A stretch of 64,000 nt of DNA from Lepidodermella squamata (GCA_047495785.1 JBLDXI010000020.1:1302001-1366000); one strand, 5' to 3'. Positions 23,098-34,093 are shown, counted from the first letter of the stretch. Made by a program: numbers and translations. Notes: generated by a model from the sequence alone, not told the origin.

Positions 23098-24838
23098 CTA
23101 TTGCCAAACGGCGGCATAATTTCCATAGAGAGCAGCTGAAAGTAAGAATCATTGAAAATCATTCATGAATCAAGGTGTGTAATATACCTGGAAGAGGACC
23201 ACCCGCCGTGAACAATCGCATACCGGTAGAATCGAAAGAGTGTGTGAAAATGGCTTGATGTCGGCTTCGATGGCTCCAATAAGCCGGGAGGAAAATGAAC
23301 GGGTCGTTCTGTTCCTCGCGCTTAAACCAACCGGGAGTTGAATCCAAGGATAGGGAGTGGTGTGGTGTTGTCGACCTTTTAGTGGTAATTGGTGACAACT
23401 GAGTCGGATTCGAAGACGGCATAGATTCATCAGCTCGCATAAACTGGTTATTCGTCATTTGAAGCGTTCGGCAAAGCGTCACGAAGCTCATCGTATGCAA
23501 ATTAAAAAACATTATGCCTCCATCGCCCGTTCCAATAGTTAACATATCCTCACAACTTGAACCGGATGAACAGCTAGAAGAGGGCGATGTCGATTCAAGG
23601 TGATTTGCTGTAAACCAAGATGGCGATACTGACGCAAAACTCAGCGATCTAACAGCGCAATCAGCGGCAGGCATTCTGATACGCTTCACGATTCCTAATC
23701 GCTTCGAATCCACGAGAAGAACGACACCTCGAGAACCTACCGCATAGCAATCAATTTTAGGACTATAAGCCAAACAAACATTTTCGACTGAATTGACGGT
23801 TGTAGAACGGATCATTTTCAATTTTCCAAGGTCGAACAAAGCAAGATCGGCGTCGAGAGTCAAAGCCGCAAATTCTAAACGTTGGGTATTAACGGCCAAC
23901 GCACGAACACGATTATTTGACGCGAGAATATCATCTGGTTGCGAATTAATGTTCACATCAAATACAGGCTTGAGCGAGAGGACCGATTCAGAATTAGGCC
24001 TTTCAATGCTTTCACTGATAGTAGATGTTAGCCGGGGGCGGTAGCTGCGCTGTCCCTCCATGGCCGAACCGGTGCGTTTAGTACCTTTCGTTCGCCCTGA
24101 CAGAGAGTAAGATTTAGGGGCGGCTACAAGCGACTCTGGAGCTCGCCAAAGCGCGATGCGACCGTCGCGACCGCCGGTGAGTAACAAGGCATCGTCAACC
24201 CATGCAATGTCAAACAACCAGTCAGTGTGGACGTTTTCTCCAAGGGCAGCAGGTGCTAGAGAAGGCAGTTCGTAGAGTGCCAAGTCATTTGGCTGAGAGC
24301 CACCGGTAGCCAATAACGTGTGACTTGGATTGAGCGCGATACTGTGGGCAAATGAAATTTTACTCAGCGTTAAATTACCATTAAATGGTCGACGTGTTAC
24401 CTATGAATTCCGCAAGAGCAGTCTAAGATTTCGGACCGTCCACTTCCCGATATCAAAGGAATTTCATCGATTTTTCCACTGCTGGTATCAAGAACACACA
24501 TCTGCGAACACGAAGTTGAGTTGGAAAGTGGAAGATAAATTGAGTTAGCAGCCCTTACTTTATTGCATTTAGTACCAAACACAACCGCATTTTTATCAAG
24601 CCATTTAGAAGTGAATATCTTGTTGACATAACCAACATCATACTTGGTCTCCTGTGGAAAATGTATGGATTCGTCAAATACTGAAATTGATATCTTAACT
24701 TACATTCAAGCTGGAACAAAATGCAGCCGTTAAAGCAGGAGAGAATGATAGTCCATTCTGCCAAACATTCGAAAATGCGGAGTCGTTACCGGTGACTTCT
24801 CTGTTGAAAAGATAAGTCCATGACTTGGATCGTTGCAT
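23098..24838 (-). CDS. DCAF12: DDB1- and CUL4-associated factor 12 (WD40)
   Basis: YLFNREV; NKIFTSKWL..VVFGTKCNK; ATGGSQPNDLALYELPSL..HTDWLFDIAW; C-terminal AIFTHSFDSTGMRLFTAGGPLP|AALYGNYAAVWQ. Confidence 0.93.
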
Positions 24839-27617: not shown

Positions 27618-29257
27618 TTATTTCATCGTGACTACAATACGGGCTGTTGACAATGACATGAAGGCATCACTCATCTCATTTATAATGGGTCTTTCCAAGT
27701 TCACAAGTGATGCCACGACGCGGACAATCGCTGTTGCATAAGGCCAAGTATTCAAATGAAAATACTGTAATATTTCATAAAATTTCATTCGCCCGATCGC
27801 TCTCTCTATATGCACGCGGTTCCGCGCAACCTGCCTGGTATGTTCTATTTCATCTAAAGTAAATTGAGGTAAAAAAGCAAAGGGAGGTATGTTACATCCG
27901 ACATGTCGGGGCAAGATATCCTCAATCAAGAAACCCTTATCGGCTAGAATAAAATGACCGGGATCTTTAAGATGCTTCAAAAGACCGCCGTGAATGACAA
28001 CTTTCTTATCACTAGTACTGCCCGGAAATAAAGGTGACACAAAATTAATAGTACCACAAGGGGCGATTGAAACTAGTAGTTTGAGCGTAGTGCCACCACG
28101 ATAAGCGCTATACATTGGTTGTTTCAAGTTTAGATCTTTTCTGGGCTCGTCGCAAAAGAAATCAGTACAATCGATTATAAAAGTTGTCATTTCTAGAGAA
28201 GGTTTGAAGGAATTGGGCACAAAACTTGGATTTGTCGATTGCTCCAACGGAGGAGGTAATAAGAAGGCGTGGCTTAGCAGGTCGTCAAGAACCAAAATAA
28301 TGCTATTAAAAACATCCGCAGCAACGGTTTCAGAAATATCAAACATGTTAGCCAAAGTGTGATTTCTATGATTGAACCTCAGTTTAGCTAGAGTGAGATA
28401 TAATTGATCACGAATCGGAAGAATTGAACATTTATATGGGAAATAATCTTTAACATCATCAAGCAGACCATGTAGCGCATCAAAAGTTTGCAAATCTACC
28501 ATTCCTATTTCTTCAAGAAAATGCTTTTCTCCTCGTTCGAAACACTGTTGAGCAAACGACCATCGCGGCAAATCAGGATTAACAGGAGTTGGCTTATATC
28601 CTACATAAATTGTCGAAGAAGCACCAGCAATAAGGCTGACCTCTTTTTGTAGTTGACCTTGCGTAACTTCCTCCAGAGGGACCACCGTTGCTGCCACGTT
28701 ATCAACATCGATTGGTTCAGAAACAACTTCACTCAATTCGTGCGTTTGTTGCGTTTCCCCCGAATCATGAGCAGCATTCAAGTCCATTGCTGCAAAAAGA
28801 TCGCAAGGGTATGCGGTTGCTTCCTCCTGAGTCATTCCAGTTGCCATGGATGAAACGAAGTAGGCGTGCTCAGTCGCAATGGTGGGAACAGTATAAGAAT
28901 GATCCGGAGGTAGAACTCTAAATTTATATAAAAATGTATTCAAATAGGGACCGATTAATTCCACTATCTAAGACATACCTAAATTTATGCGGTGGCGATA
29001 ATGATTTTTCCCCGGAAAGATCCATGAGCCCTCGGTAGTGTACATCACATGCGCGATAGCCCCTTTTCCGAGCCTTCTCTGGAGTAACGCCTGTAATTCT
29101 AAACAAAAATGAATCACGGTCACTCAAAAATCATAGCAACACACTTAAGATATTTCAACCATTCAGCAGCTTCGCTTTCATTCTTTGGAAGTTTGACTCT
29201 GTGCAATCCTTTTCCACGAACTTGACAACTTCGATGGCAACAGTATGGAGCATTCAT
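27618..29257 (-). CDS. THAP + HTH + DDE_Tnp_4-type transposase
   Basis: Two small exons give MNAPYCCHRSC..EW..ACDVHY (THAP C2CH); the large exon has DQLYLTLAKLR..LANMFDISET (HTH), IIDCTD, ILADKGF and RVHIERAIGRMK (DDE triad). Confidence 0.92.
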
Positions 29258-30768
29258 GTTTATTAACATCACGAAACCCTAAAAAACATAAGTCATTGAA
29301 AACTTTGCCTGCGAGCCGTTCGTCAGGCTGTGTACTCTAATTGTAAAACTAATGTTGCGGAGAAAAACGCGTCTCCTCACTTCAAAGTTGCTAAACTGCT
29401 GGTCAATGAGTGTCTCGAACAGGTCAGCAACTCAACGCCAGATCGGCCGCTGAATCCTAAACGTCTCCGTAGAGATCGCCAGCCGGCAAAACCAAATGAC
29501 CTTGCAATTTTGAAAATTTACATCTTTTTATTAATAACGTTTATTTTTCATTAGAAATTGATAATTTTATTTCGATTTTATTTTTTAATGCAAAAAACTG
29601 CGGCGACGGTCTGGAGAATTTTTTGTAAAACTCTAAAAAACTGGCTGAAATCCCTGCCAAATTCGATAATAGCAATTGTAAATTAATATGTAGTTATTAA
29701 GGAAGCAACTCGAGCAATATTTTATTCTACGAGTCCAACCTTGACGCACATTTTGGCGGTACTTGCGTTTTTATTGGCTCATCACCTCGAACCTCGACTC
29801 TATCGAGCCCGGCGATTTAGGCTAGACAAACTATAGCCACGAAGATTTCGTCCATCGGAGACTAGCTGGTTATAGCAGCGGGACCTGTTGGTGTGACCTT
29901 GTTGACAGGCTTTGTGCCTTTGTTGTATAAACGAAACCCTGAGATGGGTGTTAAGCCGTCGTTATTATCATCATCTCTCGAGCTGGCTTGGTGCGATATT
30001 CTATCCTTTGCTTTAATAAGTATTACATATTACCGGACACGATCCTAATCGACTTGTTAGCAAAGAGATGGCATTATACCTTGATGATTGGGAGACACTT
30101 AAGATTAATTTGACCCTGGCCCCTTCTTAGACGAATGTGAATCCATTATGGGGATGGGGATGTCGGCGTTTGCATGTCAAAGAATCTTGGGATTCAGTAA
30201 TTTTATGCTCTTCATGTCGGCAAGAAAGGCATTACAATCTCGAACAATAGTTGCACGATATCGTCGAGAAAAATCGTAAAAACACTTTATTGCCTTTCTA
30301 GCCTACGGTCTCTTTTGATTGTACTCCAAAATAAATACCTTATACTATCAAGGGGTGTGTTTTCTGTTTTTGTTATAGGTATTTTCATGCTCGAAAGGAT
30401 CACATTTTGTCATAAAAAGCTATTATTTTCGAATATGTAGGCATTGCAAAACTTTTGAAATTCTGCTGCTGATGCTCCTCACTGACTCGAAATTTTGACA
30501 AAAAATCAAACAGGGATAAATGCAACATCAGCCCTGTATTATAGTATAAATCCACCTATTTTATTCGATAATTGTCCGCTATTTGTTTCCGTTGGGAACT
30601 TCTGTGATAAGCTTTGACTTGAAATGTGAAAAAGACCGCGACAGCCCCGTTACTCTTGGAGGGTAATTGAGTAATTATCTGTGCTGGTAATTACTGAATG
30701 CTACAATTCATCAGCAATTTGTACAGCTTTTTAGTTATTTATCGATTCTACTTCTATTTTAGATAGTA

Positions 30769-30963
30769 ATGACAAAGAGAGCTGACGCTCCTGGTGAAGT
30801 TATTCGTCGCTTGCAGCAAAACATACCTGCATTTACCGATATTTTCGACGAGGAATCGTTCTATATTTTTGCGTTTGCCGTCGTCATCCTAACGATTGTG
30901 GGCGTATACATTGCTTCAAAGTTCGTAACCCTCCGCGATGCCGATGATTTCCACATTGATTAA
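30769..30963 (+). CDS. 64-aa single-pass membrane microprotein
   Basis: ATG follows an acceptor-like ttttag; IPAFTDIFDEESFY precedes one ~22-aa hydrophobic helix and SKFVTLR; protein-like composition. Confidence 0.7.
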   Translation: MTKRADAPGEVIRRLQQNIPAFTDIFDEESFYIFAFAVVILTIVGVYIASKFVTLRDADDFHID

Positions 30964-30984
30964 TTGAAAACTACAACTCCTCTG

Positions 30985-33900
30985 ATGCGTCATTTCGGCT
31001 TCATACTGCTTGGATTTGCGATCGTCGATGGCGTCTTATCCACGCTGTTTTTTGCACATTTCAGCCTGGAGTCCATCCGATTATATTTAGCCAGACTAGT
31101 TTTCTTCAATTTCTTTGAGGACTACCAAGATATTTGGCTCTTGGCACTATTGAGAAGCTGCATCATAGCAGGAGGAGGATTAGGTAAATTTTCTGATTAA
31201 AGCGCCGTCTATTTAGTCACTATTTTGATATTTAATGCTAAATTCACACAGGTATTTTGCGAAACCGAAATGCCGCAATCCATCGACTTTCAATTTATTC
31301 ATATTGCATCGACGGATTCGCTACCCTTGGTGTGTTGTTCCTTCTGGTTAAATTCCTCTTAACTACTGAAACATCGACTGAACTTTTCCACGTTAGTTGA
31401 GAATTTCGCAAGTTGCTTGGTTTCAAGATTATGTTACTTTCAGAATGTTCTTTTCTGGTTGCAACTTGTTTGGGCATTTTTCGCCACTGTTCTGATATAT
31501 CCGCTCAGCTATTTAATGCGAAGTCGGGCTCGAACCCTTGTGGCGGACGAAGAAAAGGCGTCAAAATTACAGAAGGAAAAGAGTGAATCGACCACAAATC
31601 TTCTAAAAGCCGAGGAATCAGAATCTAAGCCAGCAGAGGACGAAGATCCAGAACAATCGCACAAAGTTGGCGTTCTGCGATTGCTAAGCTTTTCAAAACC
31701 GGATTGGTTTGTCATACTGTCGGCATTTGTCTTCTTGTTGATCGCTGCCGGTGCTGACGTGTTGTAAGCTTTAGGTATTTAACACGAAAAATACTGACTA
31801 TCGGATAATTATTTTAGGGCACCAAAATATATCGGGGAGGTCATTAGTGGCATTGCCATATCGAAATCAGCTTCCGAATTCACTCATGCCATAATTATGT
31901 ATGCGATAACGTCTGTGGTTAGCTCCATTGCCACTGGTTTGCGCGGAGGTCTCTTCACCGTTGCGCTTGCACGCCTCGGAAAGCGCATGCGACAGCTCGT
32001 TTTTACGTCAGTTCTTAACCAAGAAGTCGCTTTCTTTGATAAAACTCGAACTGGCGATATTATGAGGTCAGTTCTTTTTAAATAAAAATATTTCGAAATG
32101 TTTACTTTCTGACCTTGTTTAGCCGTCTTTCTGCCGATGTGGCAACAATGACTGACACACTTTCATTGAACCTAAACATATTCTTGAGGAGGTAGAATTA
32201 AATTTCCCAATATTTGGCGACTGATTTATGTGTTTCTTTTTCGAAGTTTTGTGAAAGCTGCAGGAATGGCGTTCATGATGTTTAGTTTGAGCTGGCGCCT
32301 AAGCCTGATAACTGTAGCAGCTCTGCCAATAATTGCTATGATAAATCAATGGTTTGGTGATTTGTACGAAAAATACTCATCGAAAATGCAAGACTCAATT
32401 GCAAAAACAAGCCAAGTTGCCGAGGAGACTATATCGAATTTCCGTACAGTTCTTTCATTAGCCGGCGAAAAAGTTCAATTAGGTAAGCGACGATCTATTA
32501 AGTATTCAACGAATTTTCAATTTTGAAATTTCAGCCCGTTACTGTGATGACCTTGCAAAAGTTTACAACATTCAAATAAAACTCGGCATCGTTTATTCGA
32601 ATTCGATTTGGACCACGCAACTTCTTTCACTGGCCCTGACCCTGGCAACATTGTATTACGGAGGGCATCTTGTTGTTACAAATCAGCTGGATGGCAAATA
32701 TGTAGTTACATTTCTCATTTATCAAATGACTCTTGGTGATTGTCTGCAAAGCATGGGTTCAGTTTATTCTGGCCTCATGCAATCTCTGGGCGCTTCAAGA
32801 AAGGTTTTCCAGTATTTGGATCGGAAACCTCGTCAAAACAGATCTGGACCTGTTATTCCGTCATTTGTAAAAGGTCGAATCGAGTTCAAAAATGTTTCAT
32901 TTTCGTACCCGACCCGCAAAGACGCGCCGGTTTTGAAAAATATTTCATTCACTGTTGATCCTGGAAATGTTGTTGCTCTAGTTGGGAAGTCTGGATCTGG
33001 TAAAAGTTCATGCCTTGCACTTTTGGAGCGATTTTATGACCCATTAGGCGGGGAAGTTTTATTTGATGGTCGCCCGATCGGGGATTACGATCATTGTTAT
33101 CTACATCGAGCGATTGCTATGGTGTCTCAGGAGCCAGTTTTATTCGCCCGCTCCATTCGGGAGAACATTCTTTTTGCCACGGAATTTGCGAAAATGGGCG
33201 AGGATGATATGCTAGAAGCCGCGAAAATGGCCGATGCGGATCAATTTGTCAGCAACTTGCCGTCGAAATATGACACCGAGTGTGGCGAAAAAGGCGTTCA
33301 GTTATCTGGCGGCCAGAAGCAGCGCATTGCGATTGCTCGAGCGCTGATCCGCCGACCCGATGTGTTGCTGTTAGATGAAGCAACCAGTGCGCTGGATGCA
33401 ACTGCCGAAGCAGCGGTTCAAGCGACTCTTTCTCGCGCTATGGCCGGCCGGACTGTTCTAGTGGTAGCCCATCGCTTGTCAACGATACGCAATGCTAATC
33501 TCATTCTTGTACTCGAAAAAGGCTCTGTAAGTCGATTGTTGCACCAATTAGTTGATGAAATTTGTAAGGTGGATTATTTTCCCACGATTTCGTATTTTTT
33601 TTTTACAAAAATATCGAAGTATGAGCACTTTGGTTTGGTAAATATTGAACATAAAACCAGGGATTTCGATTTAATCTTGTAATATTTCGAAAATTTCTCG
33701 TTTCATCCTTAGGTATACTTCAACGAAAACAAAAAAAAATTGTACAAAATATTTTCAGCGAAATTTCCAGTTACCTATAAATATATTTTATATTTTATTC
33801 AGATTGTGGAAAGTGGTACCCATGACGAACTTATTGCACGTGACGGGGCCTACGCAACCTTGGTCAGAAAACAGCTAACATCGGGCGCTTCTGCCGATGA

Positions 33901-34093
33901 CACTCCTTCACCCGAACCTCTCGCCAAACAGAACTCGAAACTATTAGTCGAAGCTCAAGCTGACGTTCATGCCTCTTATTCCGAAAGTCTCCCACTCGGA
34001 AAATCTCCCGCAATCAATTTTATTCGACCAGACACGGCCTCGGCAAGTGGCTCGCCCGAGAGCGGTAAACACAATGACAAAGTTTTGGTGTAA
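30985..34093 (+). CDS. ABCB9: ABCB half-transporter, ABCB9/TAP-like
   Basis: N-terminal TMD0-like hydrophobic region; RLLSFSKPD; GLRGGLF; QEVAFFD; Walker A GKSGSGKS; signature LSGGQKQR; Walker B LLLDEATSALD; H-loop AHRLST; about 8 exons. Orthology to ABCB9 is the best guess. Confidence 0.85.

What the first reader, a model, noticed from the sequence alone, without database searches (positions are those of the whole stretch)
30769..31200. Membrane microprotein ORF in frame with, and 21 nt upstream of, the ABCB9-like transporter: dicistronic or readthrough unit
Seen: the 64-aa single-TM ORF ends at TAA 30961-30963; the same frame stays open through LKTTTPL into the likely transporter ATG at 30985. 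The spacer ttgaaaactacaactcctctg has no AG (no cis- or trans-splice acceptor), no polyA signal and no room for a promoter. Inference: both proteins come from one mRNA by reinitiation or leaky scanning, or readthrough adds an extra helix before TMD0. The microprotein could be an undescribed accessory subunit or translational regulator of a TAP-like peptide transporter.
Basis: partly seen in the sequence, partly recalled or inferred. Interest (0 to 1): 0.75.

Follow-up and report, generated by a model that had tools for sequence, protein, structure and literature searches.

The report
Conserved microprotein gene ahead of ABCB9 transporter
The small reading frame 21 bases ahead of this animal's ABCB9-type transporter gene is a real, ancient membrane microprotein gene that most likely shares one messenger RNA with the transporter; related animals carry it next to other genes, so it is probably not a dedicated transporter part.

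Summary
The ORF 30769-30963 encodes 64 aa and ends in TAA. A 21-nt spacer without AG or a poly(A) signal follows, then the ATG at 30985 of an ABCB9/TAPL-like half transporter.

An ORF of this size is not beyond chance, but conservation shows it is a gene. It belongs to a large protein family with no Pfam match and only uncharacterized or hypothetical names in databases. The family has 139 cluster representatives, from molluscs, insects, mites, an amphipod and nematodes. Members share the core P-x-F-x-D-[IV]-F-D-E-E-[ST]-F-Y-I-F, one membrane helix and a conserved C-terminus, which is where the window's TAA falls. Between two relatives, synonymous sites are saturated (pS 0.90) while pN is 0.16, and their spacers do not align.

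The order microprotein then ABCB9 recurs on the same strand in seven further loci, including the mussel Potamilus. One spliced cDNA-like contig carries both ORFs.

Arthropods instead place the gene directly after mRpL53; in Tribolium the junction reads TAAcATG. Nematode gene models fuse it to DDX55.

The dicistronic reading is therefore supported, though RNA from this species could not be reached. Readthrough is rejected. A dedicated transporter subunit is possible but weakened.

The parts
30752..30762 (+). 3' splice acceptor (pyrimidine tract plus TAG) ending 6 nt before the microprotein ATG. It is either a spliced-leader trans-splice site or the acceptor for a non-coding first exon.
   Evidence: Read directly. 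An equivalent acceptor lies 5-24 nt before the microprotein ATG in L003, L075, L007, L073 and probably L024. In L003 versus L004 the cDNA diverges from the genomic sequence exactly at this acceptor.
30769..30963 (+). Microprotein gene of 64 codons plus TAA. It has an N-terminal helix, the acidic core motif PAFTDIFDEESFYIF, a membrane helix (about residues 31-49) and the family C-terminus ...HID.
   Evidence: homologues and motif. (purifying selection). (hydrophobic segment; AlphaFold helices 7-18, 22-25 and 28-52, mean pLDDT 81.5). It is single-copy in the genome.
30964..30984 (+). 21-nt spacer between the two ORFs, with no AG and no poly(A) signal.
30938..30967 (+). Out-of-frame mini-ORF of 9 codons holding the only two internal ATGs. 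It overlaps the end of the microprotein ORF and stops 17 nt before the transporter ATG.
   Evidence: Read. ATG count is 2 observed against 3.4 expected.
30985..31183 (+). Exon 1 of the ABCB9/TAPL-like half transporter (start of TMD0).
   Evidence: The 5' splice site G|GTAAAT begins at 31184.
31252..31391 (+). Transporter exon 2 (TMD0).
   Evidence: Splice sites and frame read. Weak match to the L004 TMD0.
31444..31763 (+). Transporter exon 3 (end of TMD0, linker, first core helix).
   Evidence: E 9e-9 against the L004 transporter.
31818..34093 (+). Remaining transporter exons: core membrane domain, nucleotide-binding domain (exon 32535-33526) and the last exon 33803-34093 with its stop codon.
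   Evidence: PF00664 at 4e-19; PF00005 at 3.4e-35. (the best half-transporter structure is human ABCB9, 345.6 bits, against 276.5 for TAP2). for the sequence.

Best explanation
The 64-codon ORF is a real protein-coding gene. It belongs to a widespread family of about 60-aa single-pass membrane microproteins that has no Pfam match and is found in spiralian and ecdysozoan animals. In this genome it is the 5' cistron of a two-cistron unit whose second cistron is an ABCB9/TAPL-like half transporter.

Shown here:
- The family is conserved at the protein level.
- The stop codon sits at the family's C-terminus.
- The order microprotein then ABCB9, on one strand, recurs in eight loci.
- A spliced cDNA-like contig of a relative carries both ORFs in one exon.
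- A splice acceptor lies just before the microprotein ATG, and no processing signal lies between the two ORFs in the window.

Inferred:
- The mature mRNA starts at the acceptor 6 nt before the microprotein ATG.
- Ribosomes translate the microprotein first, because its ATG has a purine at -3.
- The transporter is then made from the same mRNA, by reinitiation after termination 21 nt upstream and perhaps some leaky scanning.
- The small ORF therefore also throttles transporter output.

The shared reading frame is a coincidence. The microprotein probably has a general membrane role of its own, because arthropods keep it as the cistron after mRpL53 and nematode gene models fuse it in front of DDX55.
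For: Homologues:
- One search found two relatives at E 9e-11 and 4.5e-8.
- The profile search found 139 cluster representatives at E<=1e-3 and 56 at E<=1e-10.
- One search returned named hits in Dreissena, Octopus, Nucella, many insects, a mite and an amphipod.
- Searches give the alignments and the core motif.

Selection: L003 versus L075 has pS 0.90 and pN 0.16, and the spacers do not align. L009 versus L050 gives dN/dS 0.05.

Linkage to ABCB9 (spacer between the microprotein stop and the transporter start):
- window, 21 nt
- L003/L004, 677 nt
- L075, 406 nt
- L007, 204 nt
- L073, 976 nt
- L024, about 1.3 kb
- L010, about 3.8 kb
- Potamilus streckersoni L078, about 1.6 kb
.

The partner in these loci is ABCB9-like (E 5e-78 to PDB entry 7v5c, aligned from residue 7).

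Transcript evidence: L004 matches genomic L003 across the microprotein, the spacer and TMD0. It departs exactly at a 3' splice site upstream and at a 5' splice site downstream, so it is spliced RNA holding both ORFs.

Signals:
- Acceptors lie before the microprotein ATG in five or six loci.
- L075 and L007 have no poly(A) signal in their spacers.

On the tree, all seven ABC-linked rows fall on one side of a branch (87/97), and none of 500 label shuffles clustered as tightly.
Against: - No RNA from the window's own species could be reached, so co-transcription here rests on anatomy and on a relative.
- L004 is a de novo assembly. Such assemblies can merge overlapping or read-through transcripts, and its spacer holds one AATAAA.
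- Reinitiation after a 64-codon ORF is usually inefficient in eukaryotes.
- ATGs are not depleted between the two starts in any locus, so leaky scanning cannot be the general route.
- In L010 the transporter's first coding exon has its own acceptor 3.8 kb downstream.
- In Potamilus, the genome annotation models the two as separate genes.
- Dreissena has no transporter within 10 kb downstream.
Confidence: 0.75

Rival explanations
1. Dedicated partner: the microprotein is an accessory subunit, chaperone or trafficking factor of the TAPL-type transporter. It would be encoded on the same mRNA so that both proteins are made together.
For: The same-strand order has persisted in eight loci spanning a probable gastrotrich, at least three mollusc lineages and other spiralian-like sequences. 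Both products are membrane proteins. TMD0 domains of TAP-family transporters are known docking platforms for partner proteins (general knowledge, not tested here).
Against: - The core motif is kept just as well where the neighbour is mRpL53, in 14 loci including Tribolium and Drosophila, or DDX55 in nematodes.
- Dreissena has lost the linkage.
- From my own knowledge, untested here, Drosophila has no ABCB9/TAP-type transporter yet keeps the microprotein.
- No complex prediction or co-evolution test could be run.
Confidence: 0.17
2. Two messages from one precursor: the transporter is translated from a separate mRNA, made either by spliced-leader trans-splicing at an acceptor inside the small ORF (for example cttgcag, 30810-30816) or from a start site inside it. 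The full-length RNA would serve only the microprotein.
For: - A plausible pyrimidine-rich acceptor exists inside the ORF.
- Earlier notes of this scan report spliced-leader trans-splicing in this genome (not tested here).
- This route would avoid inefficient reinitiation.
- In L010 the transporter exon has its own acceptor.
Against: - One internal AG with a pyrimidine run is expected by chance in 195 nt.
- Such an mRNA would still carry the two out-of-frame ATGs at 30938 and 30944.
- No RNA evidence is available.
Confidence: 0.2
3. Stop-codon readthrough fuses the microprotein to the transporter and adds a fifth helix before TMD0.
For: The two ORFs share a frame, with only the TAA between them.
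Against: - The frame offsets in relatives are 2, 1, 0 and 1, with further stops in between.
- The TAA lies exactly at the family's C-terminus.
- TAA is generally the least leaky stop codon (general knowledge).
- The transporter's Met aligns with the first Met of its orthologues.
Confidence: 0.02
4. Purely regulatory or chance upstream ORF whose peptide does not matter.
For: ORFs of this length are common by chance. Any upstream ORF lowers downstream translation.
Against: Amino-acid conservation holds across phyla and across genomic contexts, with saturated synonymous sites.
Confidence: 0.02

Closest known systems
Bicistronic animal mRNAs that encode a conserved microprotein upstream of a main ORF. 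Examples from my own knowledge are human MIEF1-MP, ASDURF from ASNSD1 and SLC35A4-MP. The Drosophila Sloth1/Sloth2 bicistronic transcript is described in PMC9681215.
   Same: A conserved small ORF and a second ORF lie on one mRNA, and the small protein is under selection on its own account.
   Different: This is a different protein family. Its partner gene changes between phyla (ABCB9, mRpL53, DDX55), and it can be either the first or the second cistron. Translation of both ORFs has not been shown here.
Spliced-leader operons of nematode type
   Same: Closely spaced same-strand genes lie in a genome that earlier notes of this scan say uses spliced-leader trans-splicing. An acceptor lies just before the first ATG.
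   Different: The defining poly(A) signal and trans-splice acceptor between the cistrons are absent from the 21-nt spacer, so the two ORFs cannot be separated there.
Human ABCB9 upstream ORF (PMC9648851)
   Same: It is an upstream ORF, taken from ribosome-profiling ORF catalogues, in the leader of an ABCB9 mRNA, and it was one of several tested for repression of a reporter.
   Different: The human uORF has 40 codons and ends in Pro-Pro. It is a regulatory uORF, not a roughly 62-aa membrane protein ending in ...GHID. No homology was tested, and no human sequence was fetched.
Small single-pass proteins that bind TAP-family transporters, such as the viral inhibitors BNLF2a and UL49.5 (own knowledge)
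   Same: A membrane protein of about 60 aa with one helix, associated with a TAP-family transporter.
   Different: No sequence relationship is known. Here the association is genomic only, and no binding has been shown.

Membership tests
Unnamed microprotein family (core P-x-F-x-D-[IV]-F-D-E-E-[ST]-F-Y-I-F) | Significant sequence similarity to family members. | tested here: met
   (E 9e-11 and 4.5e-8). (139 representatives). (129 proteins at E<=1e-3).
Unnamed microprotein family (core P-x-F-x-D-[IV]-F-D-E-E-[ST]-F-Y-I-F) | Core motif directly followed by one hydrophobic helix, then a short C-terminus ending ...H-[IV]-D. | tested here: met
   (P20, F22 and E28 invariant; F26, D27, F31 and Y32 conserved in at least 90%). 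(19-residue hydrophobic segment 31-49, mean hydropathy 2.56). The window's protein ends ...FHID.
ABCB9/TAPL-like half transporter (the downstream gene) | One core membrane domain plus one nucleotide-binding domain. | tested here: met
   PF00664 at 4e-19 and PF00005 at 3.4e-35.
ABCB9/TAPL-like half transporter (the downstream gene) | Closer to ABCB9 than to TAP1, TAP2 or the mitochondrial ABCB half transporters. | tested here: met
   ABCB9 345.6 bits, TAP2 276.5, TAP1 264.3, ABCB10 255.1 (nucleotide-binding-domain exon only). No tree was built.
ABCB9/TAPL-like half transporter (the downstream gene) | An extra N-terminal membrane domain (TMD0) before the core. | tested here: met
   Exons 1-3 encode hydrophobic segments that align with the TMD0 of L004, L075, L007 and L073. 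L004's TMD0 aligns to human ABCB9 from residue 7. The helix count was not computed.
Bicistronic mRNA | Both ORFs lie on one mature mRNA. | tested here: inconclusive
   Met in a relative: spliced contig L004 carries both ORFs.
Bicistronic mRNA | Both ORFs are translated. | not testable with these tools
   This needs Ribo-seq or mass spectrometry.
Spliced-leader-resolved operon | A poly(A) signal and a trans-splice acceptor between the cistrons. | tested here: not met
   The spacer 30964-30984 has no AG and no AATAAA or ATTAAA.
Programmed stop-codon readthrough | The in-frame relation and the downstream extension are conserved among relatives. | tested here: not met
   Frame offsets are 0, 2, 1, 0 and 1, with further stops in between.

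The most novel reading that the evidence does not exclude
The microprotein is an ancient, dedicated partner of TAPL-type lysosomal peptide transporters in spiralian animals. It would be made from the same mRNA so that it assembles with TMD0 as the transporter is synthesised. Its placement after mRpL53 or before DDX55 in ecdysozoans would then be a later re-housing of a gene that has no promoter of its own.
Probability: 0.15. Interest if true: 0.8.

Novelty: new member of a known kind. Interest (0 to 1): 0.55.

Why it matters
It adds a clear, deeply conserved case to the short list of animal mRNAs that encode two unrelated proteins. The microprotein family is found in both spiralian and ecdysozoan animals and has no Pfam entry, no solved structure and no paper that I could find.

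The family is unusual because it sits tightly against a changing host gene: before ABCB9 in spiralians, directly after mRpL53 in arthropods, and before DDX55 in nematodes. That makes it a natural system for two questions: how a second ORF gets translated in animals, and how small genes survive without their own transcription unit.

For ABC-transporter work, it names a candidate partner or translational brake of TAPL-like transporters that can be tested in invertebrates.

Tried and rejected
Dead ends on the microprotein itself:
- Pfam and NCBIfam scans of the microprotein found nothing.
- A profile search against solved structures gave only chance-level pilin hits at E about 0.1.
- An exact-sequence look-up for transcripts of this species found nothing on record.
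- The protein atlas gave only 'hypothetical protein' clusters from arthropods and flatworms.

Linkage tests that came out negative:
- DDX55 is not near the window; its best matches lie on contigs C1 and C21.
- mRpL53 gave no hit in the window.
- Dreissena (L074), L079 and several 6-10 kb gutless-worm-type contigs show no transporter downstream. Long introns could hide one in the worm contigs.
- L002, the closest single homologue, is linked to mRpL53, not to the transporter.

Literature: searches for ABCB9 with upstream ORF, TAPL with microprotein, mRpL53 with bicistronic and related terms, and one run accession found no description of this family.

Full report
**1. Observation**

The sequence is as described.
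- An ATG at 30769 opens a 64-codon frame that ends in TAA at 30961-30963.
- The 21 bases 30964-30984 contain no AG and no AATAAA or ATTAAA.
- The next ATG, at 30985, is in the same frame.

An ORF of this length is not remarkable by itself. The window has 91 ATG-ORFs of at least 64 aa, and first-order Markov surrogates average 65. The shared frame is a 1-in-3 event.

**2. The downstream gene**

Splice sites read give these exons:
- 30985-31183
- 31252-31391
- 31444-31763
- further exons from 31818 to the stop codon at 34093

The exons carry PF00664 (4e-19) and PF00005 (3.4e-35). Among half transporters with solved structures, the nucleotide-binding-domain exon is closest to human ABCB9: 345.6 bits, against 276.5 for TAP2 and 264.3 for TAP1.

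The Met at 30985 aligns with the first Met of four other ABCB9-like TMD0 exons, with seven invariant positions besides that Met. The transporter's start is therefore well placed, and its frame is closed upstream by the microprotein's stop codon.

The joined protein was not built or searched.

**3. The small ORF is a real gene**

Homologues:
- A word-based search found two homologues of 62-67 aa.
- A profile of the three sequences found 139 cluster representatives at E<=1e-3 and 56 at E<=1e-10.
- A wider profile found 129 proteins. Named ones come from the molluscs Dreissena, Octopus and Nucella, from many insects (Drosophila, Tribolium, Bombus and others, named 'uncharacterized protein LOC...' or 'hypothetical protein'), from a mite and from an amphipod.
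- Potamilus, a mussel, was added.

Shared features:
- The core is P-x-F-x-D-[IV]-F-D-E-E-[ST]-F-Y-I-F, running straight into one hydrophobic helix.
- Many members end ...[KR]-D-A-G-H-[IV]-D followed by the stop codon.
- The window's protein ends ...FHID, so the TAA is at the family's C-terminus and is not a sequencing error.

Selection: between L003 and L075 synonymous sites are saturated (pS 0.90) while pN is 0.16, and the non-coding spacers of the two loci cannot be aligned. A closer pair, L009 and L050, gives dN/dS 0.05.

Other properties:
- The family has no Pfam or NCBIfam model and no relative of solved structure.
- AlphaFold predicts helices 7-18, 22-25 and 28-52, with mean pLDDT 81.5.
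- Across 72 family sequences, the 15 residues before the helix carry a mean net charge of -3.1 and the 15 after it +0.3. By the positive-inside rule this weakly suggests that the N-terminus faces out and the C-terminus faces the cytosol. This is an inference.
- The gene is single-copy in this genome.

**4. Linkage to ABCB9**

A transporter with an ABCB9-type TMD0 follows the microprotein on the same strand in eight loci.

| Locus | Spacer from microprotein stop to transporter start |
|---|---|
| window | 21 nt |
| L003/L004 | 677 nt |
| L075 | 406 nt |
| L007 | 204 nt |
| L073 | 976 nt |
| L024 | about 1.3 kb |
| L010 | about 3.8 kb |
| Potamilus streckersoni L078 | about 1.6 kb |

The L004 transporter is ABCB9-like, with E 5e-78 to 7v5c and an alignment that starts at residue 7.

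In a tree of 67 family members, all seven ABC-linked rows sit on one side of a branch with 87/97 support. The named molluscs are on that side. The arthropod and nematode rows are on the other. The window's sequence branches first on the mollusc side.

The tree rests on only 63 columns, so it is rough. It suggests that the linkage is old within Spiralia. The linkage is not universal, because Dreissena has no transporter within 10 kb downstream.

**5. One mRNA?**

L004 comes from a different sequencing run than L003. The two are 99.8% identical across the microprotein ORF, the whole spacer and the TMD0 exon. L004 leaves the genomic sequence exactly at a 3' splice site 10 nt before the microprotein ATG, and again at a GTATGT 5' splice site, after which it continues in frame with the next transporter exon. 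It is therefore spliced RNA in which one exon holds both ORFs.

Supporting anatomy:
- An acceptor 5-24 nt before the microprotein ATG recurs in the window, L003, L075, L007, L073 and probably L024.
- The spacers of L075 and L007 hold no poly(A) signal.
- In the window, the 21-nt spacer excludes a promoter, a poly(A) site or an acceptor between the ORFs.

Earlier notes of this scan (not tested here) say that this genome is probably that of a gastrotrich, that it uses a spliced leader, and that acceptors lie just before start codons. That fits an mRNA beginning 6 nt before the microprotein ATG.

Caveats:
- A de novo assembly can merge read-through or overlapping transcripts.
- L004's spacer has one AATAAA.

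**6. How the transporter is translated (inferred)**

- The microprotein ATG has a purine at -3 in all five loci examined, so it should be used efficiently.
- ATGs between the two starts are not depleted in any locus; the window has 2 against 3.4 expected. Leaky scanning therefore cannot be the general route.
- In the window, the most economical route is reinitiation after termination 21 nt upstream. This mirrors Tribolium, where mRpL53 and the microprotein are joined as TAAcATG.
- The alternative is a separate transporter mRNA, trans-spliced at an internal acceptor such as cttgcag at 30810-30816.
- On any mRNA that carries both ORFs, the small ORF must lower transporter output.

**7. Readthrough**

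Readthrough is rejected for four reasons:
- The frame offsets in relatives are 2, 1, 0 and 1, with further stops between the ORFs.
- The stop codon is at the family's C-terminus.
- The transporter's Met is at the position of the first Met in the four aligned relatives' TMD0 exons.
- TAA is generally the least leaky stop codon (general knowledge).

**8. A dedicated transporter partner?**

The same protein, with the same core motif, is found in other genomic contexts.
- It lies directly after mRpL53 in 14 loci. These include Tribolium castaneum, where a poly(A) signal follows right after the microprotein's stop codon, and Drosophila rubida.
- A mite orthologue is even named 'L53-like'.
- In Trichinella and Pristionchus, gene models fuse it to the N-terminus of DDX55.
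- Single contigs place it after PRP38, before an MFS transporter, or before an F-box/PHR protein.

From my own knowledge, untested here, Drosophila lacks an ABCB9/TAP-type transporter.

The microprotein therefore very probably has a function that does not depend on ABCB9. Its constant feature is tight, same-strand packing with a host gene. A specific role with TAPL in spiralians is not excluded; I put it at about 0.15-0.2.

**9. Comparison with known systems and novelty**

- Conserved microproteins encoded upstream of, or beside, a main ORF on one mRNA are a known kind. An example is Sloth1/Sloth2 (PMC9681215); from my own knowledge, so are MIEF1-MP, ASDURF and SLC35A4-MP.
- The human ABCB9 leader has an upstream ORF listed in ribosome-profiling ORF catalogues, but it has 40 codons and ends in Pro-Pro (PMC9648851). 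It is a different kind of element.
- I found no paper on this family or on its linkage to ABCB9 or mRpL53.
- I class the finding as a new member of a known kind. Its unusual feature is that the partner gene changes between phyla.

**Verdict**

- Observation: confirmed.
- Dicistronic reading: supported, but not proven for this species.
- Readthrough: rejected.
- Accessory-subunit idea: weakened.
- Interest: 0.55.

Noticed in passing
L076:4468-5189 (Tribolium castaneum, GCA_031307605.1): The mRpL53 ORF ends in TAA. One base later the microprotein ATG begins (TAAcATG), and an AATAAA follows right after the microprotein's stop codon. This is a very tight two-cistron gene that looks built for termination-reinitiation.
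   Followed up: partly
L002, L008, L016, L022, L023, L035, L045, L047, L048, L058, L066, L071, L077: mRpL53 (PF10780) lies upstream of the microprotein on the same strand in many metagenome and metatranscriptome contigs and in Drosophila rubida. This is a second conserved linkage, apparently typical of arthropods.
   Followed up: partly
P0105 (Pristionchus fissidentatus); P0111 and cluster members (Trichinella spp.); P0115 (source not looked up): Gene models fuse the microprotein to the N-terminus of the DDX55 helicase in Trichinella and Pristionchus. P0115 shows the same fusion to a DEAD-box helicase. In nematodes the microprotein gene probably lies just upstream of DDX55, perhaps in an operon.
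   Followed up: no
L062:8-1909; L039:22-1028; L044:11-1320: Single transcript-like contigs place the microprotein immediately before an MFS sugar-transporter ORF (no gap), before an F-box/PHR protein, or after PRP38.
   Followed up: no
alignment A2 (P0030, P0032, P0043, P0058, P0079): Some family members have a 90-160-aa C-terminal tail rich in Lys, Glu and Arg after the membrane helix. Six of the 33 members give weak hits to PF06237 (SLC52 riboflavin transporter; best E 1.9e-4), which I cannot explain.
   Followed up: no
window 27618-28964 (-): A 448-aa ORF with DDE_Tnp_4 (2e-31) and HTH_Tnp_4 domains: a PIF/Harbinger-type transposase. It lies 1.8 kb upstream of the microprotein gene.
   Followed up: partly
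window 23159-24313 (-): A 384-aa ORF matching the DCAF12 beta-propeller (6.2e-38).
   Followed up: no
L074 (Dreissena polymorpha, CM035915.1): The microprotein gene stands alone here. A minus-strand gene follows it, and no ABCB9-like sequence lies within 10 kb, although its protein is the closest relative of the ABC-linked L007.
   Followed up: partly
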